64,000 nt of DNA from Octopus sinensis. Its lineage: Eukaryota. Shown here piece after piece: positions 10,871 to 59,490 of the stretch (position 1 is the stretch's first letter; each line of letters starts with the position of its first letter). Under the pieces are notes generated by a model. It had not been told where the DNA came from. It made no database searches and worked only from the letters and a program-made list of their open reading frames with translations. The position numbers were made by a program, and so were the translations under genes. The DNA lies in NCBI RefSeq assembly GCF_006345805.1, contig NC_043001.1, forward strand, positions 89,404,001 to 89,468,000. The letters run 5' to 3'.

Positions 10871-12102
10871 GTAAGTCATAATCAGCCATTCTATTCTTTT
10901 CTACGACCACACCTTTTGTATAGTAACTCCTATAATTATCATCATCAGCATCAACGTCATTTAATTTCCCTCTTTCTATGTTGGTATAGGTTGAATGATT
11001 CAACAGGAACCAATAAGCCAGTGAGCTATGCTGAGCTTCAGTATCTGCAGTACTATTCACTCGGGTGATATAAATGATATCATTTATCCCAAATGATATC
11101 ATTTATCATACCTCTTCTTCCTCTTTGACCTACTCCTATTTCCTACACTTCTCCTCCCCCAAACTGATATTCAATTCTATACAGTCACACATGTTTTAAT
11201 GTTAATTTTTCCATGCTTACATGAATCTGACAAACTTCATTGAAGCAGAATTTTGACTGCCGGATATCATTTCTGTTGCCAGCCCTCACCCGTTTCCAAA
11301 CAAGGTAATATTTCCCCATGAACGAACATGTTTTCATGGAAGATTGGAAACAAATAACACCTCTTGTCTGATGGTGATGCTTGTTTACAATTACTATGTT
11401 ACATCAAAACAAAATGTACAAACACACTTACACACACGTATGTGTGTGTATGTGTCATCATCGTCATCGATTTTCTAACATTATTGCGTTCTCATCGCAA
11501 GCATCTACATCATTATTCGCAGAATGGTTGGTATTAAGAAGGGCATCCAGCCGTAAAAACCCTGCCAAAACAGACACAGTAGCCTAGGGTAGTTTTCTAC
11601 CTTGTTGGCTCCTGTCAACCAGCCTACCTATGCATTCATGGAAGATGGATGTTAAATGATGATGATGATGATGATGATATATATATATATATATAAAAAT
11701 ATATAAAAATACAAAATGGGACAAGAACGCAAAACACTCAAAGAGACGACACAAAAATCGGACGGGTCATTCGAAGCCTCTCAGTCAAGAACCGGATCAT
11801 CCTCGCAATTTCGGCTGATTAATCTTGAGATCGCTCCGATCAGGCCAGCCCCAAGGAAAAACTAAGCTACGAGCATTAGATTTCTTGGAAAAAGGATTGA
11901 ATGTATACGAAACAAGGACAGAAAAAAGGTACGATGCCACACGAATATAAATACAAAAAACAATAATAGTAATAACAGGACAAAAACAGTGGGTGTCTTA
12001 CGACTTTAGACAGTTCAACTTAGCTTTGCTGGCGTATTTGGAAAAAAATGCCGTTGCGGTAGACGAAGAAAACGATGTTGTCATGGCGGTGGTCAGAAGC
12101 CG

Positions 12103-12799: not shown

Positions 12800-13260
12800 A
12801 TATGGGTCTTCTCAAGCACAATGTATTACCAATCATTTCAGTTCTTTGTCATCTCTTCCAAGAGACTCAATATCAGGTTGGTCTTCACTACTTCATCCCA
12901 TGTTTTCCTGGATCTTCCCCTTCTACATGTTCCATTCACATGCAGACCTCAGCATATCTTTCTTGTACATCATATTTGATGCGTCTTATACCCAATTTTT
13001 CTCTCGACATTTATACTTTGTCATAAATGCACACTGACAATACACATCTGGTGAAGTATAGTCACTTCATTTCTTTCTAGTCTTTCTATATCCCCTGCAT
13101 TCATAGCCCAAGTTTCACAACCATGGAGCATTGCTGCGTGAATACAAACATCATGCAATCTGCCTTTCACTCTGCATCTGAAGCCTTTTGTTACCAACAG
13201 AAGTAATAGTCCCTGAATTTTCTCCAGCTAGTTCTTATTCTAGCAACTGTACTTTCAGAA
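12800..13260 (-). mobile_element. Old degenerate 3' fragment of the RTE LINE family
   Basis: Reverse complement aligns by eye with the thumb/C-terminal coding region of the 25.5-kb copy (GRPRKTWDEVVK, KGRLYDAC, AMLHGSETW segments). Confidence 0.75.
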
Positions 13261-13992
13261 TGTCCCTCTCCACTGTATATATCTCATCGTCATTTAATGC
13301 CTGTTTTCCATGTTGGCACCAGCTAGACCATATATATCTATATATACGTAGAGACTATGAGCTTCTATCAGTTTCCACCTACTAAATCCACTCACACGGT
13401 TTTGGTCAGACTGGGGTTATTGTAGAAGATACTTGTCCAAGATACCACACAGTGGGACTGAACCCAAAAGCACATGGTTAAGGAAACAAACTTCTTAACC
13501 ACACAGCCATACCTCCACTTGCATTTATATTATATCTATATAGTTATATCTTCAATATAATTACACTTTTTAATATAACTTCTATATAGTCGCACATTTT
13601 ATATTATTTCTCTATAGTCACTGTTTCAGTATAGTTATATTTTCCATATTACTCATATATAACTACACCTATATTATTTCTGTATTGTAACATCTTCCAT
13701 ATTGCTTCTGTATAGTTACACCTATGATAATTGAACAAATGAGACTCTTCATAGTCTCATTTGCCTTATTACAAATAATCAAATCTCTGACATATTACAC
13801 CTTACCTTCTTTGAAAATGACTTGCTGGATAATGTGCATATAGATAAAGATAGGATGGTTGCACCTGTATTTTGTTTCGCCATAGATTTGCTTGATCAAG
13901 ACTGGCTTCAGGCTGAGTAGCAACAACAACAAGATGATAATAATAATGATAATAATAATAATAATAATAATAATAATAGTAATAATAATAAT

Positions 13993-18508: not shown

Positions 18509-18913
18509 GTAACATTTATTTGTTAAATAACTCTTTACTTAGCATCATTTATTTTATAATTGCTTGACAGTGACTCCCACTCTACCTTCGCTTTTCTGAT
18601 AGGTACATTACCTGATAGGCCTGACCACAGTGGCTCAGAAATTGTCTACTATTCTAGACTTGGATATAGTGGCTTATAGGTTACCTGCTAGATAATTTAG
18701 TGCTACTTGTTTGGTAGTTTAGTGATATTAGTTAGATAATTTAGAGTATTAATTATGTAATTAAGAGGTTGTCGATAGATAATTAAGATACCCCTTTAAG
18801 TAATCTCAAAGATACTTATTCACATTTGAATGGAGTTTAATAGTGGCAAACCAAAACATAATATCCATTTCTTTAAATTTGACAAACACGATAAGCAAAA
18901 ATAAATGTCTTTC

Positions 18914-19281
18914 GTGCCGGTGGCACATAAAAAACACCATTCGTGTGTGATCTTTACCTGCGTCGCCTTACTGGCACTTGTGCTGGTGGCACATGAAAAA
19001 ACATTCGAGCGAGGTCGTTGCCAGTGCTGCTGGACTGGCTCTTGTGCAGGTGGCACATAAAAAGCACCATTTGAGCGTGGCTGTTGCCAGTACCACCTGA
19101 CTGGCCCTCGTGCCAGTGGCATGTAAAAGCACCCACTATACTCTCGGAGTGGTTGGTGTTAGGAAAGTCATCCAGCTGTAGAAACTCTGCTAGATCAGAT
19201 TAGAGTCTGGTGCAGCCTTCTGGTTCACCAGACCTCAGTCAAATCGTCCAACCCATGCTAGCATGGAAAGCGGATGTTAAA
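18914..19281 (+). mobile_element. RTE 3'-UTR-only copy with four ~65-bp modules and (TGA)n tail
   Basis: GTGC(C/T/A)RGTGGCAY modules at 18914, 18980, 19044 and 19110, followed by the same terminal ~150 nt as the long RTE copies. Confidence 0.85.
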
Positions 19282-20460
19282 CGATGATGATGATGATGAT
19301 GAATCTAATATCTATTAACTTCTTAGTTAACTTCTTCATTAATTTCTTTGGTTTTCTAATTCTTTGAGGAGAATTACATCCCAAATCTTCATCGCAAGAG
19401 CTATCTATATCTCAAAATAGTAAAGAATTACAACAGTTGTTTGGGTTCTTTGCATTATAAGCAAATGGCTCTCTTCTGACTGTTCAATAATTAGTCATTA
19501 GTGATGCAATATTCTGACTATCTAAGGATGATATAATCCTTTAGCATTTAAACTGGCCATACCTGACCCAAATAGTCTACCAGTTGCATGTTCGAATTGG
19601 CCAGATGCAGCCTCTCTCACCTACCCAACAATGTTATTCTAGAAATAAACAATTGTATCAAAATTTTGAAGCTGTAAGATAATGCATGATTAATTCAAAA
19701 CAGTGTGAATAAATAAGCATTACATTTGACAGAATAATTTGAATGCAAAAAGGATAAAGTGTATCAATTCTGTCAAAATAATTGACTGGGTGGATGTAGG
19801 TGCTATTAATAATGATGTGTCTGTTATCATTAAAATAGAGGTTATTAATGAAATTATTGGTGTAACATTATCACAAGGTTCCTAGACCTGTGGCATTTTT
19901 CTCAAGGTCTGGAAAAACTTTTACCGTATGAAAACATCATAACATATACCATGAACACCATCTTCCACCACCATCTTTATGTGAAAAAACATCACAATGA
20001 CCACAACCAACAGTTGGAGAGTTGCTGCTGCTGCTAACCCAAATGCCAAGCAGTTTAAAATAAAATAATGAGATCACTGTAACTACACATTTCTTGGACT
20101 ACTTCCTACTGAAGATAGGTGTTTGTGCCCAAAATATAAAGGTCTTTTGTAAAACTTTCTGCATGGTTAGAAGCTTTTTTTTTATTTCTCTATGCTTGGA
20201 TTTTCTACTTCTGGACTACAATGCTTCAAGCAAACTGCAATGCTTCAAATGAACTACAATGCTTCAAATGAACTACAACACTCTTATTCTCTTACCATAT
20301 TGTCAAAAGAGCTTACACAGTTATAGAACTTGAGAAAAGTAAACATTTCTCAATTTTGTGACAGATGAAAGGTGCACTGTGTTTGACAATAAAAACTATA
20401 GAAAAATTTTATTATAGTGAAAAAATCCTTCACTAGCAAATCAAAATTTCTCTTCTTTTA

Positions 20461-24939: not shown

Positions 24940-25573
24940 GTAATGTGGCACTTGTTTATTCACTTTTGTCTGTTTGTAAATTCATTGTGGAATCTAAGAC
25001 TCTTATCTGTGATTAACATCATCATCATCTCTTAATATCTGTTTCCCATGCTGGTTCGGGTTGAACGGTTTGATAAGAACTAGGTTTTTACAGCTGGATG
25101 CCCTTCCTAACACCAACGACCTTACCAACTGTAAGCATTTTCATTGTGAGCTTTTCTTCCAACATCTCTACATCTTTCTTGTATCACTTCATTGTTGTGT
25201 GGTCAAAAAACCAGCTCTGATTGAACATCCTATAACACACATTTTCCCATATTTTCTGGCATACAACTTGACATTGTATATAGTGTAGATATGTAGTGTA
25301 AACATTCAAACATTATCACTATCATTCCAAATCATGTTGCATTTCACATGGAACTTTTGAGCCTCCAAAGTTGTCTTGGTGTATAAGTTGACCTGGTTTT
25401 TTTTACTGTAAATCTTGGCCTGAAAAATTTGACAGTAATCAGTCAGTCAAAAGACCAGGTGCAACACAAATCTGTTATTTCAATTATACCAATCTACCTG
25501 TATTAGCTCATGTTTCTCTCTTACTTGTTGCATCTTATTCTTCTCTCTGTTATTTTTAGCAAGCCCTGTGACT

Positions 25574-28038
25574 TCAGGAAACCAACAAGCCACCTGGTCA
25601 CCTACCGATCGGGCCGGCATGCTAGCCAAATCGACTACATCCTCGCCAGAAAAAGGGAAAGATGGCTGCTTATAAATGCCAAAACCTTCCCGGGCGAAGA
25701 ATGCACCCCACAACATAGACTGGTAGTTACTGACTTTAGGATCAGGACTAAGAGGGCGACTAGAAGACGACCAACATGGAGAAGAAGGGTCTGGAAGCTT
25801 AAAGACCCTGCGAATGGACAGAGATTTAGAGATATGTTACTTGAAGCCTTTGACGAAGTGGAAGGGGGTATAGCTACACATGGGGTAGAAGACAACTGGA
25901 CGTTTCTGAGGGACAACCTGCTGAAAGCCGCTGACCAGATCTGTGGCTGGTGCAAAGTCCCCTTAAGACCCAAAATAACATGGTGGTGGAACAATATTGT
26001 TGATAGGGCTATTAGACAAAAGAAACAGGCTTGGAAGGCCTGGAAGAACGGTGGTAGCAGGGAAGTGTATCAGACTGCCAGAAGGGAAGCTAGGAGACAG
26101 GTCTATCTAGCCAGAGGGGAAGCAGATAAAAGAAAATTTGCCAATGTCCTGCGCCGTGAGGATGAAAGACTTGAGGTATTTCGTGTTGCAAGACAGTGTG
26201 TGAGAGAGAATCGAGATGTGGTAGGAGAGAAATGTGTTCGCATGGAGGATGGTTCACTTGCGTTAAATGAGGATGCAAAGAGAGAAGCTTGGAGACGCCA
26301 CTATGAAAGGTTGCTGAATGAGGAAAATGAATGGGATAAAGAGAGTCTGCCGAATGTTGACCCAACAGAGGGACCAGCTATCCGAGTTGATAGTTCCGTG
26401 GTAGCTAAGGCAATTAGAAGCATGAAGACAGGGAAAGCCCCAGGCCCATCAGGAATTACTGCAGAGATGCTCAAAATATCTGGTAGTGTCGGCTATAGCA
26501 TAGTCTCCCGTATAGTTAACCAGGTGATACACGAAGGAGTCATACCCAATGACTGGTGTAGCAGCATAATAGTCAACTGCTACAAAGGTAAAGGCGATGC
26601 CCTAGATACAAATAACTACAGGGGCATCAAGCTGTTGGATCAGGTAATGAAGGTTACGGAGAGGGTTATAGCCCAGTTAATTAGAGAGAGAGTTAGCTTA
26701 GATGATATGCAGTTTGGGTTCGTGCCAGGGAAAAGTACTACTGATGCTATATTCCTGGTAAGACAGCTGCAGGAGAAATACCTAGCCAAAGGTAAGCCCT
26801 TGTACCTGGCTTTTGTTGACTTAGAGAAAGCCTTTGACAGGGTCCCCCGATCCCTTATCTGGTGGTCAATGAGGAAACTAGGGATAGATGAATGGTTAGT
26901 GAGAGCTGTGCGAGCCATGTACAGAGACGCAGCTAGTAAGGTGAGGGTTGGCAACGAGTACAGTGAAGAATTCCGGGTAGAGGTTGGGGTCCACCAAGGT
27001 TCAGTCCTCAGCCCCCTCCTATTTATCATAGTCCTCCAGGCAATAACGGAAAAATTTAAGACAGGATGCCCCTGGGAGCTCCTATATGCTGATGACCTTG
27101 CTCTAATTGCTGAGTCACTATCAGAACTGGAGGAGAAGTTTCAGGTGTGGAAACAAGGATTAGAATCGAAGGGCCTTAGAATCAACCTAGCCAAAACCAA
27201 AGTCCTAATAAGTAGGAAGGTGGACCAACCACAAACGACTTCAGGTAGATGGCCCTGCTCGATCTGTAAAAAAGGTGTAGGTAGAAACTCTATAAGGTGC
27301 ACCAAGTGTAAGCTATGGACACATAAGAGGTGCAGCAATGTCAAAGGAAGGCTAACTAAGAAAATAGTTTTTGTCTGTGGCAGATGCTCAGGAGAAATAA
27401 ACACTGGAAATGTGCAGAGTCCAACTTCTACCACGTTCCAGGGAGACAAACTAGAAGTAGTTGATAGCTTCCGCTACCTAGGAGACCAAGTCAGTAGCGG
27501 GGGTGGGTGTGCTGAAAGCGTAACTGCTAGAGTAAGAATAGCCTGGGCAAAGTTTAGAGAGCTCTTACCCCTGCTGGGGACAAAAGGTCTCTCGCTAAGA
27601 GTAAAAGGCAGACTATATGATGCGTGTGTACGTACAGCCATGCTACATGGTAGTGAAACATGGGCCGTGACAGCTGAGGATATGCGTAAGCTTGCAAGAA
27701 ATGAAGCCTGTATGCTCCGATGGATGTGTAATGTCAGTGTTCATAATCGTCAGAGTGTAAGTACTTTGAGAGAAAAGTTGAACCTAAGAAGTGTCAGTTG
27801 TGGTGTGCAAGAGAGACGGCTGCGCTGGTATGGTCATGTGACGAGAATGGCTGAAGATAGTTGTGTGCAAAAGTGCTACACCCTAGCAGTTGAGGGAACC
27901 TGTGGAAGAGGTAGACCCAGGAAAACCTGGGACGAGGTGGTGAAGCACGACCTTCGAACTTTAGGTCTCACCAAGGAAATGACTGAAGACCGAGTCCTAT
28001 GGAAGTGTGCTGTGCACGAGAGGACCCGGCAGGACTAG
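25574..28038 (+). CDS. RTE LINE ORF2 (C-terminal end of APE endonuclease, RT, PHD-like finger, thumb); open but 5'-truncated
   Basis: SQIDYIL, QHRLVV, YRGIKLL, QFGFVPGKSTTDAIF, AFVDLEKAFDRVP, GVHQGSVLSPLLF, LLYADDLAL, FRYLG, RLRWYGHV and GRGRPRKTW motifs, with no stops over 2.46 kb. Confidence 0.95.
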
Positions 28039-30340
28039 TCAGGCCATATCCCGTGGCCCCTACCTGGGACGTAGTCGATCCACCTGTGCATACCTTCCTT
28101 CTTGTGACACTTGTGAAGACCTGCTGAGGCAAGTGAAAATCAAATCAATCAAAATAGATGAACATCAATGGAATTTGTATCTTTGTGGTACCAGTGCCTG
28201 TGGCACACAAGAAAACCATCCGAACGTGGCCGTAGCCAGTACCGCATCGACTGGCCTCCGTGCTGTGGGAACATGGTGGCACATAAAAACACCATCCGAA
28301 GACCCGGCAAGACTAGTCAGGTCATAACCCGTGGGCCCTACCTGGGACGTAGTCAGTCCACCTGTACATACCTTCCGACTTGTGAAGACCTGCTGAGGCA
28401 AGTGAAAATCAAATCAAATCAAATCAAAACAAATCAAAATAGATGAACATCAATGGAATTTGTATCCTTGTGGTACCAGTGCCAGTGGCACACAAGAATC
28501 CATCCGAACGTGGCCGTAGTCAGTACCGCTTGGCCGTAGTCAGTACCGCTTGTGGTACCAGTGCCGGTGGCACACAAGAATCCATCCGAACGTGGCCGTA
28601 GTCAGTACCGCATCACTGGCCATCGTGCTGTGGGCACATAACAAACACCATCCGGTCGTGGCCGTTCGCCAGCCTCATCTAGCACCTGTGTCGGTGGCAC
28701 ATAAAAACACCTTCCGAAGACCCGGCAAGACTAGTCAGGCCATAAACCATGGCCCCTACCTGGGACGTAGTCAGTCCACCTGTGCATACCTTCCTCCTTG
28801 TGATACTTGTGAAGGCCTGTTGAGGCAAGTGAAAATCAAAGGCCTGTTGAGGCAAGTGAAAATCAAAATCAAAATCAAATCAAAACAAATCAAAATAGAT
28901 GAACATCAATGGAATCTGTATCTTTGTGGTACCAGTGCCGGTGGCACACAAGAGAAAACCATCCGAAAGTGGCCGTAGCCAGTACCGCATCGACTGGCCT
29001 CCGTTCTGTGGGCACATGACAAACACCATCCGATCGTGGCCGTTCGCCAGCCTCATCTAGCACCTGTGTCGGTGGCACATAAAAACACCATCCGAAGACC
29101 CGGCAAGACTAGTCAGGCCATAACCCATGGCCCCTACCTGGGACGTAGTCAGTCCACCTGTGCATACCTTCCTTCTTGTGACACTTGTGAAGACCTGTTG
29201 AGGCAAGTGAAAATCAAATCAAATCAAAACAAATCAAAATAGATGAACATCAATGGAATCTGTATCTTTGTGGTACCAGTGCCGGTGGCACACACTTTGT
29301 GGTACCAGTGCCGGTGGCACACATGAGAACCATCCGAACGTGGCCGTAGCCAGTTCCGCATCGACCGGCCTCCGTGCTGTGGGCACGTAACAAACACCAT
29401 CCGATCATGGCCGTTCGCCAGCCTCATCTGGCACCTGTGTCGGTGGCACATAAAAACACCTTCCGAAGACCCGGCAAGACTAGTCAGTCCACCTGTGCAT
29501 ACCTTCCTTCTTGTGACACTTGTGAAGACCGGTTGAGGCAAGTGAAAATCAAATCAAATCAATCAAAATAGACAAAATAGATGAACATCAATGGAATTTG
29601 TATCTTGTGGTACCAGTGCCTGTGGCACACAAGAAATCCATCAGTGCCGTAGTCAGTGCGGTGGGCACATGACAAACACCATCCGATCGTGGCCGTTCGC
29701 CAGCCTCATCTAGCACCTGTGTCGGTGGCACATAAAAACACCATCCGAAGACCCGGCAAGACTAGTCAGGCCATAACCCATGGCCCCTACCTAGGACGTA
29801 GTCAGTCCACCTGTGCATACCTTCCTTCTTGTGACACTTGTGAAGACCTGTTGAGGCAAGTGAAAATCAAAATCAAATCAAAACAAATCAAAATAGATGA
29901 ACATCAATGGAATTTGTGTCTTTGTGGTACCAGTGCCGGTGGCACGTGGCACATAAGAAAACCATCCGAACGTGGCCGTAGCCAGTACCGCATCGACTGG
30001 CCTCCGTGCTGTGGGCACGTAACAAGCACCATCCGATCGTGGCCGTTTGCCAGCCTCATCTGGCACCTGTGTCGGTGGCACATAAAAACACCATCCGAGC
30101 GTGGCCGTCTGCCAGCCTCGTCTGGCACCTGTGTCGGTGGCACATAAAAACACCATCCGAGCGTGGCCGTCTGCTAGCCTCGTCTGGCACCTGTGTCGGT
30201 GGCACATAAAAAACGCCATCCGAGCGTGGCCGTCTGCCAGCCTCGTCTGGCACCTGTGTCGGTGGCACATAAAAACACCATCCGAGCGTGGCCGTTTGCC
30301 AGCCTCGTCTGGCACCTGTGTCGGTGGCACATAAAATCAC
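28021..30340 (+). repeat. Nested tandem array in RTE 3' UTR: six ~280-420-bp units followed by five 62-bp units
   Basis: Large units start (A/G)AGACCCGGCA(A/G)GACTAG at about 28021, 28299, 28717, 29095, 29466 and 29748. The 62-bp units start at 30041, 30103, 30165, 30228 and 30290. Confidence 0.95.
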
Positions 30341-30789
30341 CCACTACACTCTCGGAGTGGTTGGCGTTAGGAAGGGCATCCAGCTGTAGAAACACTGCCA
30401 GATCTGACTGGACTGGTGCAGCTTTCGGGCTCCCCAGACCCCAGTTGAACCGTCCAACCCATGCTAGCATGGAAAGCGGACGTTAAATGATGATGATGAT
30501 GTGACTATGGGGAGGCTCCTTTATTGTCTTCATTAGAGACAGTATATGTAAGATATGATTTTGTTAGCCTTGTTATAAGAATTATCATGAAGATGGCCGT
30601 GTGGGTTAGGTAAAAATCTGGTACTCTGTTGGTTATAACAAGGGTTCCAGTTGATCTGACCAATGGAACAGCCTGCTCAGGAAATTAATATGCAAGTGGT
30701 TGAGCACATGACAGACATGCATGGCCTTAATGTAGTTCTCACAGAGATTCAGCATGATAGAATGTGACAAGGCTGGCCCTTCAAATTAC

Positions 30790-34927: not shown

Positions 34928-37900
34928 GTATGTATAAACATAAAATATTTATATAGAATTTATCTCCTTGATTAACAAACCAAAGGGTGGTGCCATGTGA
35001 AAAGCGCCCACCATACTCTGTAAAGTGGCTGGTGTTTGGAAGGGCATCCAGCCATAAAAACCAAGCCAAATAACACTGGAACCTGGTGCAGCTGTCCTGC
35101 TTGCCAGCTCTGGTAAAACTGTCCAATCCATGCCAATATGGAAAATGGATGTTAAAGGATGATGCTGATAAAGATGATGAATACATTATGTAACTTTACA
35201 TCTCATAATGTACAGAACACTCAATTGATTTCTGTCTTCTTCATTTTTTAAGTAAGAGTACTTGGAAGATATATAATATTTAATGCTGCCCTTATATTTC
35301 TGGAAATCATGACCGAGCAAAAATTATAGTAAAGTGAAAGGTAAATTACATGGTCAGAACCCAATAGCATTGTAACATGATTTTTGTCTTTCAGTAGTAA
35401 CTGTTATTTCCTCTTTGCTTACTCCCAGAAAGTATGAAAAATGGCTAATATTTCCTTCAAACTTTGCTTTTGTTACATTTATTCAAACCTCAAAGTATGC
35501 CTCTCAACACATAGCTACGATGCTCCCCCATTACTCCTGCTCATGATCAGAGATGCATGTATTGTCAGCCACTAAGGGGCATGCTCAAGTGATTAAGTCC
35601 AAGCCACTGATAAGTAAATCTGGTATTGAGCAGAATATCTGCTATGATATTTCTGCTTCGGCAACTCAGCACTGAATCTATCTGAAATGTAATGGAAAAT
35701 AGGTCAGTTTCAAAACAATGATGTCCAGGTCTCAGAAGCAAAATTTAAAGGGAATAGTAGTAATTTCCTTTGATTTCTAGATAGAAGCAAATAGGAAATA
35801 ACACTCACTGGCCAAAAAAAAAACAAAAAAATTATTATACAATGTAATCTATACTACAAAATTAATAATAGTAAAATAAAAAAGAACAAAAACAAAAATA
35901 AATAATAGCATAAGCAATAATAAACAAGTGGACTAATGAAATAAATAAATCAACTCGATCTAATTTGGACTATGAATATATTAAAAACCCATTAATGATA
36001 AATTCTAGATTTTGTAGGTTTTAAGCCTATTGAAATAATCAAAGAAGTTAAAGCATATGTAATGTTGTATTTGACTGAGTCATCTGCATGAAACCCTCAG
36101 CCCTTGAGTCACTCTGTGATCAATTCTGTTAAGATTGATCCTGATCCTCATGGAATAGATGAAAAACTGAGACGATTGGCAGTTTACTGTGCTTGAGAAG
36201 ATCAGTCTATTACAGCAAAAAATAATGTTCTAAAAGCTTTCTGTTCATGCTTGTAATCCACTCTGCTACATCAAGCATCCCCCACATTTCATTTCCCTAA
36301 CACCTAGCTCTTTACCACTCCTCTGTCTATGGCACTACTCAGCAACTGTAATCTTGAGAGCAGAATTGGCACATATTTACTCTGTTGCCTCCTCCACCCC
36401 TCCATTGGAACCTTCTATCCCTTATTATCCTCTCTTCCCTTCCCACTCTAATTTCATTGATCACTTCCTTTCTGTGCCTTCAATTATTTCTCTCCTCTGC
36501 CATATTCCATTTTAACACCCTTCTCATGTCAGCCATCACACCCACACACTATAGCAACCCTATATCTTCCTCCCCATCACTCTTACATCTTCTGATCTAT
36601 TCTCCTCCCTTAGCCACTTATATTTCTCACCTTATTCATCTCCATACTATTTCCCATCAACTGCACTTCCCCACTTATTCATCATCCACTACCTTAACCC
36701 CACCCCCCTCCTAACCATCTGTTATCTCCTCTCACACTCTGTTGAAACTACCTGTGCTTTCATCCATTGTCCTTATCTTTTCTGCTCACCTTCTTGTACC
36801 ATGAGAGTTTTCTCCATCATCCTCTCCCTACAATCTTTAACTTCTCAGCTACTCCTACCCCACCTTATATAATATTGGATAGCCATGTCTCCTTTATAGC
36901 AAGACACCTGTGCTTGTCCCTCTATCATACTTTAGTCTTTCAAAGACTGGCATAAAGCCACTTACCTGTCAAATACTCATAGGATCCTTCCTTTTTCCGT
37001 CTTGCAAGTTACTAAGCAACATCACTGGTGCTGGTAGCATTAAAGAAAAGCACCCAATACATACTGTAAAGTGGTTAGCATAAGTTAAGGGCTTCCAGCC
37101 ATAGAAACCATACCAAAGCTGACACAAGAGCTAAGTGTAGCTTTGCAGCTTACCAGATCTTGTCAAACCATTCAACCCATGCCAGAATGATACAAGAACA
37201 TTAAATGATGATAATATATTTGTGAATCATTGTTTTAATGGCCTCCTGTCCATGTTTGCATGGATTGGACAGAGTTTATATCCATATCTGCAGATTTTCT
37301 ATGACTGGATACCTTTCTGTCACCAGCCAGCACCTGTTTTCTTGCTAATTTTTATTTCCTTATAGCCAGACATGTTTTCACAGAAGATTGGAAATGAAGT
37401 ACATCTAGAGGAGTAGTAACTCTAAATGACTTGGGTTCTAGTAACGTGTCCAGTCCATGCCACCATGGAAAAGTAGGAAAGTAGGTGCAAAATGATGATG
37501 ATCATTATTATTCTATTTGAAGAACTTTCAATATTTCTGGTTATTTGCAGATAATTATGCAAGTTTTAATGGATTTAAATATGACAAATTTGTAAAATTC
37601 TACAATTTTGTACTTTTACCCAAGAGATTATTTCATATAAGCTTTAACTAAAAGAGAAAATCAATTTGCTATTTTCTTAAAACTATTTCTATATTGCTTC
37701 AATAGCCTTAAAACCATTTTTATACAGCTTTTTGTTGTTAGTAAATAATATTTAATCTAAAAAAAAAATGGTGCCATATATGAAAGACGTGTTTTATATT
37801 TGATTATTTATATGAAATATCTCCATGTATTCTTCTTTATGTCATCAAATCTAGACAGCCAACACTGTCAGTCATCATCACTATTTGTCATCACTATCAG

Positions 37901-40436: not shown

Positions 40437-43400
40437 CAGGTAATCGAGGTAGTCAGAGATAAGGTAATCGAGGTAGTCAGAGTAAGTGATAAAGTACTTA
40501 AGATTAGATTAGTGCTTCACCATAGGTCAACTACCATCATCTCAGCATATGCCCCTCAACCAGGGCTACCGGAAGGACAGAAAGACCAATTCTATGACAC
40601 CCTATTGCGGACTACCTCGTTGACAAATGACAGTGACCTTCTCTTTATGGCAGGTGATTTCAATGGACATGTTGGACGGCATGTCGGGGGCTTCCATGGC
40701 GTTCATGGAGGCTACGGTTTTGGCTCTTGAAATGAGGAGGGAACCAGGCTGCTGGAGTTCTGCGATGCAAATGACCTTATGGTTTGCAATACCAGCTTCA
40801 GGAAACCCACCTCTCACCTACCGTTCTGGCAGACACACTAGTCAGATTGACTGCATCCTCGCCAGAAAGAGGGAAAGAGGGCTGCTTATAAATGCCAAAA
40901 CCTTTCCAGGCGAAGAATGTACTCCTCAACATAGATTAGTAGTTAGCGACATCAGGATCAGAGCTAAATGGTTGCCCAGAAGAAGACCAGCTTGGAGGAG
41001 AAGGGTCTGGAAGCTTAAAGATCCTGCAAATGGACAGAGATTTAGAGACATACTACTCGAAGCCTTTGACGAAATAGAAGGGGATATAGCTTCACTTAAT
41101 GTGGAAGACAACTGGAGATTTCTACGGGACAATCTGCTGACAGCCACTGACCAGATCTGTGGATGGAGCAAAGTCCCATCTCAATCCAGAGTAACGTGGT
41201 GGTGGAACAGTGTGGTTGACAGGGCTATTAGACAAAAGAAACAGGCTTGGAGGGACTGGAAGAACGGTGGTAGCAGGGAATTGTATCAGACAGCCAGAAG
41301 GGAAGCTAGGGGACAGGTTTATTTAGCCAAAGGGGAAGCGGATAAGAAAAAATTTGCCAATGTTCTGCGCCGTGAGGATGAAAGACTTGAGATATTTCGT
41401 GTTGCAAGACAGTGTGTGAGAGAGAATCGTGATGTGTTAGGAGAGAAATGTGTCCGCATGGATGATGGTTCACTTGCGCTAAATGAGGATGCAAAGAGAG
41501 AGGTTTGGAGATGCCACTATGAAAGGTTGCTGAATAAAGAAAATGAATGGGATAAAGAGAGTCTGCCAAATGTCAACCCAACAGAGGGACTAGCCATCCA
41601 AGTTGACAATTCTTTGATAGTTAAAGCAATTAGAAGCATGAAGACAGGGAAAGCCCCAGGCCCATCAGGAATTACTGCAGAGATGCTCAAAATATCTGGC
41701 AGTGTCGGCTATAACCTAGTCACCCGTATAGTTAACCAGGTGATACACGAAGGAGTCATACCCAATGACTGGTGTAGCAGCATACTAGTCAACTGCTACA
41801 AAGGTAAAGGAGACGCCCTAGATACAAATAATTATAGAGGTATCAAGCTGTTGGATCAGGTAATGAAGGTTACAGAGAAGGTCATAGCCCAACTGGTTAG
41901 GGAGAGAGTCAACTTGGACGAGATGCAGTTTGGTTTCATGCCAGGGAAAAGCACCACTGATGCCATATTTCTGGTGAGACAGCTGCAGGAGAAATACCTA
42001 GCCAAAGATAAGCCCCTGTACCTGGCTTTTGTTGACATGGAGAAAGCCTTTGACAGGGTCTCCCGATCCCTTATCTGGTGGTCAATGAGGAAACTAGGGA
42101 TAGATGAATGGCTGGTGAGGGCTGTGCAAGCCATGTACAGGGATGCCGTAAGTAAGGTTAGGGTTGGCAACATGTACACAGAAGAATTCAAAGTAGAGGT
42201 TGGGGTCCACCAGGGTTCAGTACTCAGCCCCCTCCTATTTATCATAGTCCTCCAGGCAATTACGGAGGAATTCAAGACAGGTTGCCCCTGGGAGCTCCTA
42301 TATGCTGACGACCTTGCTCTAATTGCTGAGTCACTATCAGAACTGGAGGAGAAGTTCCAGGTGTGGAAGGAAAGTCTAGAATCGAGGGGCCTTAGAGTCA
42401 ACCTAGCTAAAACCAAAGTACTAATAAGTAGGAAGGTAGACAATCCACAAATGTCTTCAGGAAGATGGCCCTGTTCGATCTGTAGAAAAGGTGTAGGTAG
42501 AAACTCTATAAGATGTACCCAGTGTAAGCTATGGACACATAAGAGGTGCAGCAATATCAAAGGAAGGCTAACTGGGAAAATAGTTTTTATATGTGGCAGA
42601 TGCTCAGGAGCAATAAACACCTGAAAATGTGCAGAGAACAACTTCCGCCATATTCCAGGGAGAAAAACTAGAAGTAGTTGATAGCTTCCATTATCTTGGT
42701 GACCAAGTCAGTAGTGGGGGTGGGTGTGCTGAAAGTGTAATGGCTAGAGTAAGAATAGCCTGGGCAAAGTTTAGGGAGCTCTTACCTCTGTTGGTGACTA
42801 AAGGCCTCTCGCTCAGAGTAAAAGGCAGACTGTATGATGCATGTGTACGAACAGCCATGCTACATGGCAGTGAAACATGGGCCGTGACTGCAGAGGACAT
42901 GCGTAAGTATGCTCTGATGGATGTGTAATGTCAGTGTGCATGCTCGACAGAGCGTTAGTACCCTGAGAGAAATGTTGGACCTAAGGAGCATCAGTTGTGG
43001 TATGCAAGAGAGACGATTGCGCTGGTATGGTCATGTGGCGAGAATGGATGAAGATAGGTGTGTGAAAAAGTGCCAATCCCTAGCAGTGGAGGGAACCCGT
43101 GGAAGAGGTAGACCCAGGAAAACTTGGGCTGAGGTGGTGAAGCACGACCTTCGAACTTTAGGTCTCACTGAGGAAATGACCTGCGACCGAGACCTTTGGA
43201 GATATGCTGTGCATGAAAAGACCAGGCAGGACAAGTGAGTCCAGCCCACTTATGCATGCCTTTCCTCCCTTGGACACACAAAGACCTGTTGAGGCAAGCG
43301 AAGTCGATATTGAACCTCATCCGACGACAGGTACCTATGCCAACCCCACTTTGCTTGCGAAGACCTGTTGGGGCAAGTGAAATCGAAATCGAAATTGAGC

Positions 43401-43836
43401 CAATCCTATGACTGGCATCCGGCAGATGCCAGGACCCCTGGACTGGAGATACGTAAAGAGCACTATCCGAATCGTGGCCGATGCCAGTGCCGCCTCGACT
43501 GGCTTCTGTGTCGGTGGCACGTAAAAAGCACCATCCGAATCGTGGCCGAAGCCAGTGCCGCCTCGACTGGCTTCCGTGCAGGTGGCACGTAAAATGCACC
43601 AACCCAACCGTGGCCGATGCCAGCCTCGCCTGGCTCCAGTGCAGGTGGCACATAAAAAGCACCCACTACACTCACGGAGTGGTTGGCGTTAGGAAGGGCA
43701 TCCAGCTGTAGAAACATTGCCAGATAAGACCGGAGCCTGGTGCAGCCTCCTGGCTTCCCAGATCCCCGGTTGAACTGTCCAACCCATGCTAGCATGGAGA
43801 ACGGACGTTAAACGATGATGATGATGATGATGATGA
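40437..43836 (+). mobile_element. RTE LINE copy 2 (longer 5' end including endonuclease; disrupted), in last FBF1 intron, antisense to gene
   Basis: IISAYAPQ and GDFNGHVG endonuclease motifs. Stop at 40728, frameshifts near 40800 and 42625, deletion near 42907. RT and PHD-like finger present. Three clear 62-68-bp 3' UTR modules (43508, 43576, 43639) and a (TGA)n tail. Confidence 0.95.
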
Positions 43837-44403
43837 TATATAGGAACCTAGAAGAGAGCCTCTACACGATATAAGTACCAATTTGAGATAGGAAAAGAAA
43901 AGGACTCAAACTACATATCTATTGTTCTTACTTTTGTGGTTAAGGAGTGTCTCTGTAACTCTAGGCTGATGAAAAACTAGTCAATGGATTTGGTGGACAG
44001 AAACTAAAAGAAGCCAGTCATATGTTTGTACATATTTATATGTAATGTATGTATGATGTGCATGTGTCTTAAATATTCTCCAATTATTGTGAGCTACAAG
44101 TGGTGACATTGCTGTGATTTCTCCTGTTAACAAATCACCTGCTGCTTAGTGACAGGAAGGACATTTGGCTGTAGAACAATACTTAATACATTCATCTACC
44201 ACATGCTGGCATGGGAAAAATAGACATAAAAATTAAATTGCGTACTAGGCTTACTGTGTTATGCTGTAGAATGCCTGTTATTGATTCTAAAATTAAGTAT
44301 GATAAATGTTTATCTGCTCTTTAATCATACTGTTTAACATCTCATTTGGTTCATAGATAATTGGACAGACACTCAGTACTAGCAAAGAATATTAACACAA
44401 CAA

Positions 44404-44595: not shown

Positions 44596-46291
44596 AAGAA
44601 TACTAACACAACAAGAAAACCACATTTTAGAAGACTGCAATGAAAATCAGTTCCCAAAACAAATCATAAATAAATCTGGTTTTTATTTTATCTTTCATCT
44701 TTTACTTGTTTCAGTCACTGGACTACAGCCATGCTGGAGCACCACCTTGAAGGGGTTAGTCAAACAAATCGATCCTAGTACTTATTTTTTAAAGTTTAGT
44801 ACTTACTGAACTGCTAAGTTATGGGGATGTAAATAAACCAATATTGATTGTCAAGCAGTGGAGAAAAAACAAACACACACACACATGATGGGCTTTCACA
44901 TAGTTTCTGATTATCAGATTCACTCACAAGACACTGGGTGGCCAGGAGCCATGGTAAAGAAACTTGCTCAAGGTGCTGTGCAGTGGGACTGAACCTTGTA
45001 GTTGCAAAAAGAGCTTAACCACACTGTCATACCTACAGCTACTATGGTTAAGATTTTTCAATAAATGATAGACAATATATAAACACAATATGAGTCAGAC
45101 AAAAAGATTAAATAACAAATAAATATTTATAGTTCTTTTCTTTTAGAAATTGAGACAAAAGCTCTGTAGTATAAACAGCAATGTATTTGTTGGCAAATGA
45201 TAGATTTGTGGTTCGAGACTCATCATTGAGCATGTTTTTGTGTTTTAAATGAGTGATTATAATGACTAATGTAATTTATATTAAAATCTTAGGTGCTAAT
45301 TTATTATGTTTAAGGCAGTGAGCTGGCAGAATTGTTTACTGTGCCAGACAAAATACTTGACAGCGTTTCTTTTGGCTTTATGCTCTGAGTTCAAATGTCA
45401 TTGAGGTTAACTTGGCCTTTCATCAATTTTGGGTCACTAAAATAAATACCAGTTCAGCACTGGCTTGATGGAATTGACCAGTCCTTCCCCACAACATGTC
45501 TTGTGTCTATAATAAAAAGCTAAGAGAAATAATGGTTGTGACTAGTGTTAGTGACAAGTAAAAGGCATCCAGTAACTATGTAGAGTGGTCAACATTAAAA
45601 AGGGTATCCAGTCACAGAAACCAAGCCAAAACAGATGACTGGAGCCTGGAGCAGCTCTCTGGCTTACCAGCTCTGATCAAACTGACAAACCCATGCTAGC
45701 ATGGCAAACAGATGTTAAATGAAGATAATTGTGTGAGTTGTTTTTTTTTAGCTCACCTCTCTACTCTCTATAATATAGAGACTTCTTTTGTTCCCAGTAA
45801 CTGTGTAATGCCAATGGGAATTTATTAGCTAAGTTCACTTCATGTATTATGTAGAGAAATGACTTTTCAGCCATAGTGAAAGTGATCTTTCAAGGAAGTC
45901 AGGCACTTGGAACAAACACAACAGTGACAATAGAGGAGAGATTCCTCAAGCTGCAGTGTGGGCAATTTGTCTAGTAGAACTAACTCTGAATGTAAACACT
46001 GATACAGATTAGATAGGAGTTATTAGACCATCTGTAAACAATCTACCAAGATACTACTTGAAGCATGCTAAAATATACCCAGTCCATGTTGTAAAGAGGT
46101 TAGTGTTAGCTGTAAAAAATAATCAACAAACAATAAAACATGACATGCATAACAATGATAGCAGTTTTGTTGTGGCATGTACTAAATGACAAAAGACTGG
46201 GTCAAGTGATAAGATACTGAGAGACCAATCTTACTCATGTCAACAGAAAAACAAAATCTAAAATGATGATGATGGTGACATATATAGGCAT

Positions 46292-49203: not shown

Positions 49204-49707
49204 CTGTAAGCAACAGCAAAAACAATCAACTATGTGTGTGTGCACACACACGCACACACACAACACAAGAGGCTGATAATGAGAATATAATATTGTATTT
49301 TGTTAAAAATATGTTCACTCTATTAATGAGAGTGCCTGTTTTTTTTTGACTCATGGATTTTTATGCAACCCTCCCTCTCTCTAAGTGCATATATATATAT
49401 ATTTATCATCATCATCATCATCATTTAATATCCATTTTCAATGCTGGCATGGGCTAAACAGTTTGACTTGAGGTGGTAAGCCAGAGAGTTGCACCAGCAC
49501 CAGTCTGTTTTGGAATGGTTTCTGCAGCTGGACACCCTTCCTAACACCAACCACTCTAGACAGTGTACTGGGTACCTTTAATGTGTCACCAATATGAGTG
49601 CCTTTTATGTATCACTGGCATACATGTCATCAGCATGGGTGTCTTTTACATAAAAATATATATATATATATATATATATAGGTGCAGGAGTGGCCTGTAT
49701 GTATTAT

Positions 49708-50819: not shown

Positions 50820-53436
50820 TAGAGACATCCTAGTTGAGAAATTTGATGAGAGAGAGGAGGAGCTACAGACTTGTGACATAGAGGGAATTCTTGAGGGACA
50901 GCTTGCTGAGTGCCACAGACCAAATGTGGTGGAATGATGCTGTACAGAGCCATTAGAGCAAAGAAACAGGCCTAAAAGAGTAGGGGTAACAGAGAACAGT
51001 ATCAGATAGCCAGAAGGGAAGCTAGGAGACAGGTATATCTAGCCAAAATAAAAAGTTTGCCCAGCAAAAAATAAGTTTTCCAGTATTCAGAAACATGAGC
51101 ACCAAAGAACTGAAGTGTTTTGGATTGCAAGACAATGTGCGAGAGAAAATTGTGATGTCATGGGAGAGAAATGTATCCACATGGATGATGGTGCACTTGC
51201 ATCTAATGATTTTGCAAAGAAAGAGGCTTGAAAATGCCATTATGAAAAACTGCTGAATGTAAAGAGTAAATGAGAGGAGGAAAGTCTGCCAAATGTTGAC
51301 CCAATTGAGGAACCAGCTACCCGAATTGATAGTACCTTGGTAGATAAAGCAATTAAGGATGTGAAGACAAGGAAAGCCCCCAGCCCATCAGAAATCACTT
51401 CTGAGATGCTTAAAATATCTAACGGTGTGGGTTATGGTCTAGTCACTCGCATTGTAAATCAGGTGGTTCATGAAGGAGTCACACCCAATGACTGGTATAG
51501 CAGCATAGTCAACTGCTACAAAGGTAAAGGTGATGCCTTAGATAGAAATAATTATAGAGGTATTAAATTGTTGGATGAGGTGATGAAAGTTACAGAGTCA
51601 TAGCCTGACTAATTAGGGAGAGAGTTAGTCTAGATGAGATGCAGTTTGGTTTTGTGCCAGGGAGAAGCACAACTGATGCTATATTTCTGGTAAGGCAGCT
51701 GCAAGAGAAATACATAGCCAAAGATAAAACCTTTGGCAGGGTCCTCCAATCCCTTATCTGGTGGTCAATACAGAAACCAGGGATAGACAAGTGGTTGGTG
51801 AGAGCTGTACAAACCATGTACAGGGACACTATCAGTAAGGTGAGAGTTGGCAACGAGTAGTGAAGAATTCAGGGTACGAGTAGGGGTTCACCAAGGATTG
51901 GTCCTCAGCCCCCTCTTGTTCAACATTGTCCTCCAGGCAATAACAGAGGAATTTAAGATAGGCTGCCCCTGGGGGCTCCTCTATGCTGAAGACCTTGTCC
52001 TTATAGCTGAATCACTACCACAACTAGAGAAGTTTTAGGTAAGGAAGCAAGGTCTAGAATTGAAGGGCCTTAGAGTTAACCTAGCAAAAAACAAAGTCTT
52101 AGTAAGTAAGAAGGCAGAAAAATTACAAATCTCTTCAGGTAGATGGTCCTGCTTGATCTGTGGAAAAGGCGTAGGTAGAAACTCCATAAGATACACCCAA
52201 TGTAAGCTTTGGACACATAAAAGGTGCAGCAATATCAGAGGAAGGTTAAAGGGGAAAATAGCTTTTGTATGTAGAAGATGCACAAGTACAATAAACACTG
52301 AATATGCACAGAAAATAGACTCCATCAACTGCCAGGGGGATTAAGCTAGAGGTAGCAGATAGCTTCTGTTATCTAGGTGACCAAGTTAGTAGCAGAGGTG
52401 GATGCTCTGAGAGCATAGCTGTGAGAATAAGATTAGGCTGGGCAAAGTTCAGAGAGCATCTACCCCTGCTTGCAACAAAGGGCCTCTCTCTCAGATGGCA
52501 GTGAAACATGGGCTGTGACAGCTGGGAACATGCGCAGGCTTGAAAGAAATGAAGCCAGTATGCTTCACTGGATGTGCATGTCTGTCAGAATGCAAGCATC
52601 TTGAAAAAAAAGTTGGGAATAAGAGGCATCAGATGTGGTGTGCAAGAGAGTTGACTGCACTGGTATAGTCATGTGATGCATATGGATGAGGACAGCTGTG
52701 TAAAGAAGTGCCAATCTCTAACTGTGGAGGGAACCTGTGGTAGAGGTAGACTCAGGAAGATATGGAACGAGGTAGTGAAGCATCATCTTTGAAGTTTGGG
52801 CTTCATGGAGGCAATGACTAGCAACCAAGACCTTTGGCGATGTGCTGTGCTTAAGAGGATCTGTCAAGGCAAGTGAAATCATAGTCGTGGCTGATGCTGG
52901 TATCATGTTACTGGCACTGTGCCAGTGGCACGTAAAAAACACCTTTTGAGCACTGGGCTTCACAGAGTGGCCGAGTTCCTTTCAAGTGTTTTGCCACACA
53001 GAGGCAACAACCAAGACATTATGTCATGCTTGAAAAGAAGACCCATAAAGAGCACCTTATGTCATGCTTGAGAAGAAGACCTGTAAAAAGTACCTTTCGA
53101 GCGTTGGGCCTCACAAAGGCAAAGTGGCTGAGCTTCTTTCGAGTTTGGCCTCACGGAGGCAATGACCGAGACCTTTGGATTGTCAAGCTTGAGAAGAAGA
53201 CCCATCAAGCCGAGCAAAACCGCAGTCATGGCAGATACTAGTGTCATGCATCCATGCCAGTGGCATGTAAAAGCACTCATTATGCTCTCGGAGTGGTTGA
53301 CATTAGGAAGGGCATCCAACCATAGAAGCCATGCCAAATCAGACTGGAGTCTGGTGCAGCCTTCCAGCTAGCCAACCCTGGTCAAACCATCCAATCCACA
53401 ATGCCAGCATGGACAATGGACGTTAAATGATGATGA
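50820..53436 (+). mobile_element. RTE LINE copy 3 (old, many lesions), antisense within an FBF1 intron
   Basis: Fragmented ORFs 51337..52344 homologous to copy 1, (TGA)n tail, perfect 11-bp TSD TGTACACAAGT at 50809-50819 and 53437-53447. Confidence 0.93.
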
Positions 53437-59420: not shown

Positions 59421-59490
59421 ATGCATACATACTCACACATATATACACACACACATATATATACATACATACATATAAACATACATATAT

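What the first reader, a model, noticed from the sequence alone, without database searches (positions are those of the whole stretch)
28021..30499. RT-linked array of a conserved ~62-nt structured RNA module (hairpin + H-type pseudoknot candidate) in the RTE 3' UTR
Seen in sequence: about 23 copies of GTGC-N-GGTG-GCAC-(A-rich 7-10 nt)-CACC downstream of the RT ORF, many preceded by a GCCAG(T)-variable loop-(A)CTGGC hairpin. The same module occurs four times at 18914-19135, three times at 43508-43665 and twice in copy 3 (52919, 53254). Predicted fold (inference): S1 GTGC/GCAC, a 1-nt L1 that varies freely (C, A, T), S2 GGTG/CACC and an A-rich L3, which is classic H-type pseudoknot geometry. At 53254-53277 both stems covary at once (ATGC/GCAT and AGTG/CACT), and the upstream hairpin keeps its stem while its loop changes between subfamilies. 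A sequence-divergent but structure-conserving module amplified next to an RT suggests a cis-acting RNA device, such as an RT/ORF2 binding site, an exonuclease block, a termination or processing signal, or an unrecognised small ribozyme. I do not recognise it as a described motif, but I cannot search Rfam. Some copies (e.g. 19110, 52919) break S2.
Basis: partly seen in the sequence, partly recalled or inferred. Interest (0 to 1): 0.8.

Follow-up and report, generated by a model that had tools for sequence, protein, structure and literature searches.

The report
Amplified structured RNA module, octopus RTE
The repeats are real: a ~62-nt two-hairpin RNA module of an octopus RTE retrotransposon, normally present 2-6 times before the element's 3' tail, has been amplified here to about 23 copies; its hairpins are conserved in distant RTE relatives, but the proposed pseudoknot is not shown.

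Summary
Observation confirmed with corrections. The 3' UTR (28039-30341) of a 5'-truncated RTE copy holds 23 module cores: 14 full ~62-66-nt modules and 9 partial ones. They form six ~280-420-nt higher-order units plus four extra 62-nt units. Only 10-11 have S2 in the canonical register.

A sister copy of the same subfamily (L012) has 4.5 modules, and other octopod copies have 1.5-6. The array is therefore an expanded VNTR.

Among 49 octopod modules covariation equals the shuffle level. The cited "double covariation" at 53254 is mainly CpG-type transition decay.

Cross-lineage comparison does support structure. RTEs at 50-70% aa identity (L014, L017, L019) carry one homologous module each. S1 keeps pairing with different sequences (GTGC/GCAC, GTGYCG/CGRCAC, ATGA/TCAT, GAGA/TCTC). 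The GGUG loop, A-rich tract and CACY are conserved. An adjacent H1 helix also differs in sequence between lineages.

In L019 the module lies in the RTE 5' UTR, upstream of the GGAAGGGCAUCC domain that forms the octopus "tail".

S2, the pseudoknot helix, never shows compensation. There is no Rfam match.

Best reading: a cis-acting RTE/SINE RNA recognition element, tandemly amplified.

The parts
25510..28038 (+). ORF of RTE copy 'el2' (842 aa, RT + PHD finger). The copy is 5'-truncated at about residue 250 of full-length relatives and has no endonuclease domain.
28024..30092 (+). Six higher-order repeat units: 28024-28301, 28302-28719, 28720-29097, 29098-29468, 29469-29750, 29751-30092. Each has the ORF end and stop, a ~190-nt unique 'U' segment with an (AAATC)n microsatellite, then core A, module B and module C. 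The units are 91-97% identical and each has its own indels.
30093..30341 (+). Four further tandem 62-63-nt C-type modules (30093-30154, 30155-30217, 30218-30279, 30280-30341).
30280..30341 (+). Anatomy of the terminal module. Linker 30280-30296. H1 is TGCCAG 30297-30302, loop 30303-30308, CTGGCA 30309-30314. S1 is GTGT 30318-30321, loop C-GGTG 30322-30326, GCAC 30327-30330. A-rich tract 30331-30337. CACC 30338-30341.
   Evidence: sequence; pairing
30342..30486 (+). Conserved 'tail'. It has hairpin H3 (CCACU/AGUGG, about 30340-30365), the GUUAGGAAGGGCAUCCAGC hairpin at 30366-30384 (an RTE 5'-UTR-type conserved domain), and the RTE terminal motif TCCAACCCATGCTAGCATGGAAAGCGGACGTTAAA at 30453-30487.
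30487..30501 (+). Terminal (ATG)5 microsatellite, which marks the end of the element.
18906..19312 (+). Copy 'el1'. It is a 5'-truncated RTE copy, not a SINE. Four modules lie at 18906-19133, the tail at 19134-19286, then (ATG)n.
43226..43840 (+). 3' UTR of copy 'el3' (ORF remnants 40458-43223). It has a U segment, three modules (43465-43532, 43533-43600, 43602-43663; a degenerate partial copy may lie at 43421-43446), the tail at 43664-43817, then (ATG)n.
52885..53432 (+). 3' UTR of the decayed copy 'el4'. Modules lie at 52885-52943 and 53227-53277, the tail at 53278-53432.

Best explanation
The module is a cis-acting structured RNA element of RTE-clade retrotransposons and of the SINE-like elements they mobilise. 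It has two adjacent hairpins. H1 has a variable sequence. S1 is 4-6 bp with a conserved GGUG-containing loop. An A-rich tract of 7-9 nt and then CACY follow.

In a typical RTE (L019) one copy lies in the 5' UTR. It sits just upstream of a further hairpin (H3) and the conserved GGAAGGGCAUCC hairpin. In the octopod family this whole 5'-UTR-type domain lies between the stop codon and the universal RTE terminal motif, and the H1+S1 part has been duplicated in tandem.

The window's 23-core array is an expanded VNTR-like variant of a UTR that normally has 1.5-6 modules. It was produced by unequal recombination, replication slippage or RT template switching.

Shown: homology, copy-number variation, the higher-order repeat architecture, and compensatory changes in S1, H3 and the GGAAGGGCAUCC hairpin. 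H1 is present with a different sequence in each lineage. One module plus the tail is shared with SINE-type elements.

Inferred: the hairpins are part of the RNA signal that the RTE protein binds for RNP assembly or target-primed reverse transcription. This is by analogy with stringent LINE tails and the R2 3'/5' RNA elements. Also inferred: the extra copies are redundant, or add avidity.
For: - The array and its architecture.
- Canonical copies have few modules. L012, of the same subfamily, has one partial and four full modules. O. vulgaris copies have 1.5-6.
- Cross-lineage homologs occur once each in the L014 and L017 3' UTRs and in the L019 5' UTR and its neighbouring SINE-like element.
- The structural pattern occurs twice in 4.3 kb of L019, against once in 2.4 Mb of control DNA.
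- S1 is 100% paired with 3 of 4 pairs changed on both sides. The covariation score is 0.362 against a shuffle mean of 0.182 +/- 0.036, reached by 0 of 500 shuffles. RNAalifold predicts S1, H3 and the GGAAGGGCAUCC hairpin with compensatory pairs.
- An H1 helix of 5-9 bp ends 1-4 nt before S1 in every lineage, with shuffle P between 0.0016 and 0.15.
- The GGAAGGGCAUCC domain lies 30-100 nt upstream of the start codon in three RTE 5' ends.
- One module plus the tail is shared by old SINE-type copies.
- Literature: PMC5786205 describes a conserved RTE 5'-UTR domain reused in SINEs. PMC4176376 shows that the ORF2 protein of a stringent LINE binds the tail stem-loop. PMC12222951 shows that the R2 protein binds a structured 3'-UTR element followed by an A-rich tract.
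Against: - No protein-binding or retrotransposition data exist.
- The cross-lineage set is small (12 hand-picked sequences, about 4 independent lineages) and was chosen for intact copies.
- Within octopods there is no covariation.
- Single modules fold no better than shuffled sequence (z from -1.4 to +1.0), and their minimum-energy folds often use other pairings.
- RTE relatives L018 and L020 have a 3' UTR of only ~45 nt, with no module in the 3' UTR (their 5' ends are not held). Two RTE 5' UTRs in L054 have the GGAAGGGCAUCC domain but no recognisable S1 module. The module is therefore not universal to RTEs.
- Some paralogous modules are degenerate in more than one copy of a subfamily, so not every copy is constrained.
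Confidence: 0.55

Rival explanations
1. The core folds as an H-type pseudoknot: S1 GUGC/GCAC, a 1-nt L1, S2 GGUG/CACC and an A-rich L3. This pseudoknot is the functional unit, for example a pseudoknotted RT-binding site like the one in the R2 3' UTR.
For: The geometry is sterically possible. GGUG, an A-rich tract of constant length (7-9 nt) and CACY are conserved from octopus to L019. The changes seen in the 3' strand (CACC > CACU > UACU) keep G.U pairing. R2Tg uses a pseudoknotted 3'-UTR element followed by an A-rich tract (PMC12222951).
Against: No lineage-level compensatory change occurs in S2. Two of its pairs never vary, and the others change on one side, apart from the single decayed el4 copy (AGUG/CACU). 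L014 has AACC, which breaks a pair. Paralog types A and B, and module 2 of the el1 subfamily, lack one S2 strand in several copies. When L1 is C or U it can pair with the last G of GGUG. That gives a 5-bp S1 with a triloop, which excludes S2. In C-type modules GGUG pairs with an upstream CACC in the minimum-energy fold. Sequence conservation of the loop is explained equally well by protein recognition.
Confidence: 0.25
2. A neutral minisatellite. The modules are hitch-hiking UTR sequence, expanded by slippage or unequal crossing-over, with no function. The hairpins are by-products of palindrome-rich repeats.
For: Copy number varies freely, from 1.5 to 23. There is no covariation within octopods. 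Fold energies are no better than for shuffled sequence. Some modules are degenerate across a subfamily. Some RTE relatives have no module in their 3' UTR.
Against: Compensatory changes occur in S1 and in the neighbouring hairpins across lineages with only 50-70% aa identity. H1 is retained while its sequence is replaced. The module persists in three different contexts: 5' UTR, SINE body and 3' UTR.
Confidence: 0.2
3. A DNA-level element: an internal promoter or transcription-factor site of the RTE 5' UTR, carried into the 3' UTR.
For: It lies in the 5' UTR next to the start codon in L019. The literature speculates that conserved RTE 5'-UTR sequence may bind regulators (PMC5786205).
Against: The stems covary rather than keeping their sequence, which points to a single-stranded fold. 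The element is retained in 3' UTRs and in SINE-type elements.
Confidence: 0.08
4. A small self-cleaving ribozyme or an exonuclease-resistant RNA.
For: None beyond its compact structure. HDV-like ribozymes exist at the 5' ends of some RTEs (cited in PMC5786205).
Against: No Rfam ribozyme or xrRNA family matches, even at E<=10, in the window or in the relatives. The conserved core is about 25 nt with one short helix.
Confidence: 0.03

Closest known systems
[quoted passage not shown]
   Same: The octopus tail carries the GGAAGGGCATCC domain. In L019 and L054 that domain lies just upstream of the RTE start codon. It is joined to the RTE 3' terminal motif, as in bipartite RTE-derived elements. In L019 the module lies directly upstream of this domain.
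   Different: Here the domain lies in the 3' UTR of an autonomous-type element, and its upstream H1+S1 part is tandemly multiplied. The paper describes sequence conservation only and gives no structure. I could not check whether its alignment includes the S1 core, because the figures and supplement are not held.
3' tail stem-loops of stringent-type LINEs (UnaL2, ZfL2), bound by the ORF2 tail-binding region, PMC4176376
   Same: A hairpin whose stem varies but stays paired and whose loop sequence is conserved. It is shared between a LINE and its SINE-type partners and lies near the 3' end.
   Different: The module lies about 150 nt upstream of the terminal repeat, not directly before it. It is multi-copy. 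It belongs to the RTE clade, not L2. Binding is untested.
R2 retrotransposon protein-binding RNA elements (pseudoknotted 3'-UTR element of R2Tg; 5' RNA element), PMC12222951
   Same: [quoted passage not shown] It sets a precedent for an RT recognising a small folded element, and for both 5' and 3' RNA signals.
   Different: There is no sequence or demonstrated structural homology. The pseudoknot here is unproven.
Tandemly repeated UTR modules and VNTRs of retrotransposons (mouse L1 5' monomers, SVA VNTR) - from general knowledge
   Same: Head-to-tail amplification of a UTR segment, with variable copy number between copies and subfamilies and higher-order repeat units.
   Different: The unit here is a 62-nt hairpin module in the 3' UTR. 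The units include the stop-codon region. No promoter role is indicated.

Membership tests
Any Rfam 15 family | Covariance-model match at the gathering score | tested here: not met
   There are 0 hits at gathering score in the window. Only chance-level hits at E = 4.8-5.9 fall in 27900-30600. Nothing relevant appears in L012, L014, L017 or L019. No tRNA was found.
H-type pseudoknot | Helix S1 supported by pairing and covariation | tested here: met
   Across lineages S1 is 100% paired, with 3 of 4 pairs changed on both sides. RNAalifold predicts it. Within octopods it is 91% paired but with no covariation above shuffle level.
H-type pseudoknot | Helix S2 (loop of S1 paired with downstream CACC) supported by covariation | tested here: inconclusive
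   Two pairs are invariant, and the others change on one side only (G.U) or break (L014 AACC). The one both-side change comes from a decayed copy. S2 is absent from paralog types A and B.
H-type pseudoknot | The fold forms in solution | not testable with these tools
   This needs SHAPE/DMS or NMR. ViennaRNA cannot score pseudoknots, and competing nested folds exist.
Stringent-type LINE/SINE shared 3' tail element | The sequence is shared between the LINE and SINE-type non-autonomous elements | tested here: met
   33 tail-bearing copies were aligned. The old SINE-type copies share one module (TTGCAAG-type H1 plus core) and the tail, and nothing further upstream.
Stringent-type LINE/SINE shared 3' tail element | Stem-loop immediately upstream of the terminal microsatellite | tested here: not met
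   The last module ends about 145 nt before (ATG)n. The position next to the repeat is taken by the CCATGC-NN-GCATGG terminal motif.
Stringent-type LINE/SINE shared 3' tail element | Bound by the cognate RT/ORF2 protein and required for retrotransposition | not testable with these tools
RTE 5'-UTR conserved domain (bipartite RTE-derived unit) | Sequence homology to the domain found in RTE 5' UTRs | tested here: met
   L019 nt 139-240 holds the core plus GGTTGGACGTCAGGAAGGGCATCC before the ATG at 248. L054 holds two RTE 5' ends with the domain. The tail HMM matches the L019 SINE-like element at E = 3e-12.
RTE 5'-UTR conserved domain (bipartite RTE-derived unit) | [quoted passage not shown] | tested here: not met
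   In the octopod family and in L014/L017 it lies in the 3' UTR. No full-length octopod 5' end was available.
Minisatellite / VNTR | Head-to-tail copies with copy-number variation between homologous loci or copies | tested here: met
   TRF finds periods of 62, 125, 187, 278 and 378. Other copies have 1.5-6 modules, against 23 cores here.

The most novel reading that the evidence does not exclude
The H1+S1(GGUG)+A-tract+CACY module, together with H3 and the GGAAGGGCAUCC hairpin, may be an ancient multi-hairpin RNA 'handle' that is not in Rfam. RTE-clade reverse transcriptases would use it to recognise their own RNA and that of their SINEs. It would be the structural basis of the enigmatic conserved RTE 5'-UTR / Ceph-type SINE domain. 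In octopods it has moved next to the 3' end and multiplied. Every 5'-truncated copy would then remain a mobilisable bipartite element, which would help explain the very high SINE/RTE load of octopus genomes. The terminal core may additionally close into a pseudoknot.
Probability: 0.3. Interest if true: 0.75.

Novelty: new variant of a known kind. Interest (0 to 1): 0.55.

Why it matters
Conserved central domains of SINEs, and the conserved RTE 5'-UTR domain, have been known for years only as unexplained sequence conservation. The compensatory changes seen here suggest that they are folded RNA: a string of hairpins. That would turn an open question, why these domains are conserved and what the RTE protein recognises, into one that can be tested by structure probing, binding assays and reporter assays.

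It would also supply a candidate Rfam family. It gives a mechanistic idea for the success of RTE-derived repeats in cephalopods. On a practical level, it warns that the module/tail repeats are being annotated as proteins in Octopus vulgaris.

Tried and rejected
- Rfam at gathering score and at E<=10: nothing.
- Origin from tRNA, 5S or 7SL: ARAGORN and Rfam are negative. Resemblances seen by eye were dropped.
- Exact look-up of the window's ORF: not on record.
- Viral contigs by tail pattern, protein and motif: nothing. The 45 hits to the conserved-domain (GGAAGGGCATCC) pattern were chance matches.
- Genome-contig scan: 120 hits. Only L054, L056 and L068 are real, and these are eukaryotic contamination in MAGs.
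- Covariation within octopod copies: none. This is expected, because changes after insertion are neutral.
- Thermodynamic support: z-scores are not significant.
- The idea that el1 is a SINE: rejected. It and similar O. vulgaris copies are 5'-truncated RTEs with variable truncation points.
- The idea that old SINE-type copies share only the S1 core: revised. They also carry an H1-like TTGCAAG arm.
- More distant RTE 5' UTRs (L054) and the L020 locus: no S1 module was detected by the CM.
- Literature search by sequence strings: no relevant paper.


Full report
**What is in the window.**
The window is AT-rich, microsatellite-rich eukaryotic DNA. An 842-aa ORF at 25510-28038 has an RT domain and a PHD finger. 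It aligns to residues ~250-1061 of full-length RTE-clade proteins. This copy ('el2') is therefore a 5'-truncated RTE.

Three more copies of the same family lie on the + strand:
- el1 at 18906-19312
- el3, with ORF remnants at 40458-43223 and its UTR running to about 43840
- el4 at 51070-53440

All four end in the same ~150-nt tail followed by (ATG)n.

The family is octopod. A pseudo-protein translated from the module and tail hits two Octopus vulgaris 'hypothetical proteins'. The loci fetched through them and through the C-terminus of the RT carry many copies: L010, L011 and L013 from O. vulgaris, and L012 from an ENA assembly.

**The observation.**
nhmmer finds 14 full modules of 62-66 nt and 9 partial ones between 28186 and 30341. 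A pairing scan finds 23 cores in the array. A covariance model of the core gives 19 hits at E<=1 there, while its best hit in 373 kb of prokaryotic and viral control DNA is 15 bits.

The description needs correcting on several points.
- The strict consensus has no match inside the array.
- There are three paralogous core types. A has no H1 and no CACC. B has GUGG in place of GGUG. C has a G.U in S1 and an intact S2.
- Only 10-11 cores have S2 in the canonical register.
- The array is a higher-order repeat. Six units start at 28024, 28302, 28720, 29098, 29469 and 29751. Each contains the last 15 nt of the ORF, the stop codon, a ~190-nt U segment, and A, B and C.
- Four extra C units and then the tail follow.
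- The units are 91-97% identical, and each has private indels.

**The array is an expansion.**
L012 belongs to the same subfamily (88% aa identity). It has ORF end-U-A-B-C-C-C-tail, that is one partial and four full modules. Other octopod copies carry 1.5 to 6 modules, and they are 5'-truncated at varied points, as LINE copies usually are. el1 is one such truncated copy, not a SINE.

The higher-order units have diverged by 3-9%, yet el2 keeps an intact 842-codon ORF. This suggests, as an inference, that the array already existed in the source element.

**Structure within octopods.**
On 49 octopod modules the proposed H1, S1 and S2 pairs form in 85.5% of cells. The covariation measures, however, equal the shuffle control: score 0.118 against 0.116, and pairs changed on both sides 4 against 4.7. 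Fisher tests on the variable pairs give p = 0.25, 0.24 and 1.0.

Three of its four changes are CpG-context transitions, and the copy is rich in C>T changes. Elsewhere ATGC mostly occurs with GCAC. This is what neutral decay after insertion would produce.

Single modules fold no better than dinucleotide shuffles (z from -1.4 to +1.0). Their minimum-energy folds often use other pairings. One example is a 9-bp helix between the H1 loop and the core in long-loop modules.

**Structure across lineages.**
Relatives at 65-70% aa identity (L014 and L017) have one homologous module in a ~280-nt 3' UTR.
- Their H1 is (GA)TGTCAG/CTGACA(TC), against octopod TGCCAG/CTGGCA. That is a C-G to U-A exchange.
- Their S1 is GTGTCG/CGACAC in L014 and GTGCCG/CGGCAC in L017.

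L019 is a full-length RTE at ~50% identity. It has the motif in its 5' UTR (ATGA-TGGTG-TCAT-GATAAAAAA-CACT) and again in an adjacent SINE-like element (GAGA-TGGTG-TCTC-GATAAAAA-TACT). This structural pattern occurs once in 2.4 Mb of control DNA.

I scored a 12-sequence cross-lineage alignment.
- S1 is 100% paired, and 3 of its 4 pairs change on both sides.
- The covariation score is 0.362 against 0.182 +/- 0.036, reached by 0 of 500 shuffles.
- The set is small and hand-picked, so this is supportive rather than conclusive.

Further support:
- RNAalifold independently predicts S1.
- A perfect H1 helix of 5-9 bp ends 1-4 nt before S1 in each lineage, with unrelated sequences and shuffle P from 0.0016 to 0.15.

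S2 is different. GGUG and CACY are conserved in sequence. The changes are one-sided (CACU and UACU keep G.U pairing, AACC breaks a pair), and no compensatory change occurs outside the decayed copy.

**Where the module comes from.**
RTE relatives L018, L019 and L020 have almost no 3' UTR. The ORF runs into ACCCGTCYAACCCATGC-NN-GCATGGAAA..GGACGT(ATG)n. Relative to these relatives, the octopod U segment, modules and proximal tail lie between ACCCG and TCCAACCC, as an apparent insertion.

The proximal tail (GGTTGGCGTTAGGAAGGGCATCCAGCTGTAGAAACACTGCCA) is homologous to sequence immediately upstream of the start codon in three RTE 5' ends, one in L019 and two in L054. It also folds as a hairpin with a compensatory U-A/C-G exchange.

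This fits the description of the published conserved RTE 5'-UTR domain, which is reused in SINE bodies and in bipartite non-autonomous RTEs (PMC5786205). I could not compare the sequences directly. Old SINE-type copies in the window and in O. vulgaris share exactly one module plus the tail.

**Mechanism.**
The most likely reading is as follows. The module is part of a multi-hairpin cis element: H1, S1 with its GGUG loop, the A-tract, H3 and the GGAAGGGCAUCC hairpin. The RTE machinery would need this element on its template RNA.

Two precedents support this by analogy:
- Stringent LINE tails have a variable stem and a conserved loop, and are bound by ORF2 (PMC4176376).
- R2 RNA elements combine a structured element with an A-rich tract (PMC12222951).

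The element persists in 5' UTRs, SINE bodies and 3' UTRs. This argues against a role in translation or as a promoter, and for a role at the RNA/RNP level. The tandem copies are VNTR-like, and their number looks weakly constrained. Binding and function are inferred, not shown.

**Verdict.**
The feature is real, and it is more interesting than a plain minisatellite. The pseudoknot remains unproven. The neighbouring domain is partly known at the sequence level.

Noticed in passing
window 30366-30384, 43688-43706 (and about 20 tail hits across the window): The GUUAGGAAGGGCAUCCAGC domain folds as a hairpin with loop AGGGCA. The octopod U-A pair is C-G in L019, L054, L056 and L068 (GUCAGG..CCGGC), which is a compensatory change. 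The same domain lies just upstream of RTE start codons in L019 and L054.
   Followed up: partly
window 30453-30501; L018 566-613, L019 3390-3433, L020 3900-3941: The terminal motif ACCCGTCYAACCCATGC-NN-GCATGGAAA..GGACGT(ATG)n is conserved among RTEs with only ~50% aa identity. In those relatives the ORF end overlaps it. The palindrome CCATGC/GCATGG keeps its stem while the 2-nt centre varies (TA or AC).
   Followed up: partly
window 30340-30365; alignment A3 columns 76-99: A further hairpin, H3 (CCACU/AGUGG), at the start of the tail also shows both-side changes across lineages. The internal linker ATCCGAGCGTGGCCGT resembles the tail start CTCGGAGTGGTTGGCGT. This suggests that the duplicated unit once ran from H1 into H3.
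   Followed up: partly
window-wide, e.g. 11516-11661, 35011-35161, 45583-45722, 49419-49568(-), 55225-55350(-), 58057-58174: About 20 matches to the tail HMM in 64 kb, roughly one per 3 kb, on both strands. Most are old SINE-type elements with a single decayed module. The four multi-module RTE copies are all on the + strand.
   Followed up: partly
window 43465-43600 (long-loop modules): The H1 loop GUGCCGCCU is complementary to AGGUGGCAC of the core (9 bp). It forms the minimum-energy fold, which excludes both H1 and S1. The short-loop modules have lost it through a 5-nt deletion.
   Followed up: no
L010 10001-10438, L011 10001-10396 (O. vulgaris GCA_951406725.2): Two annotated 'hypothetical/secreted proteins' (P0121, P0122) are translations of module and tail repeats. 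They are probable annotation artefacts.
   Followed up: partly
L054, L056, L068 (GTDB genome contigs); protein P0056: Contigs carrying RTE 5' ends or SINE domains are binned in bacterial MAGs (Terriglobia, Brevinema, an uncultured bacterium, and a Thiodiazotropha symbiont). This is probably eukaryotic host or environmental contamination.
   Followed up: partly
window 12829-13277 (-): A further RTE C-terminal fragment on the minus strand, at 31-45% aa identity to P0001.
   Followed up: no
window 28186-28193, 28471-28478 and other A-type cores: A-type cores are preceded by the perfect palindrome TGGTACCA in place of H1.
   Followed up: no
window 59439-59834: A long compound (AT)n/(AC)n microsatellite block of about 400 bp.
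   Followed up: no
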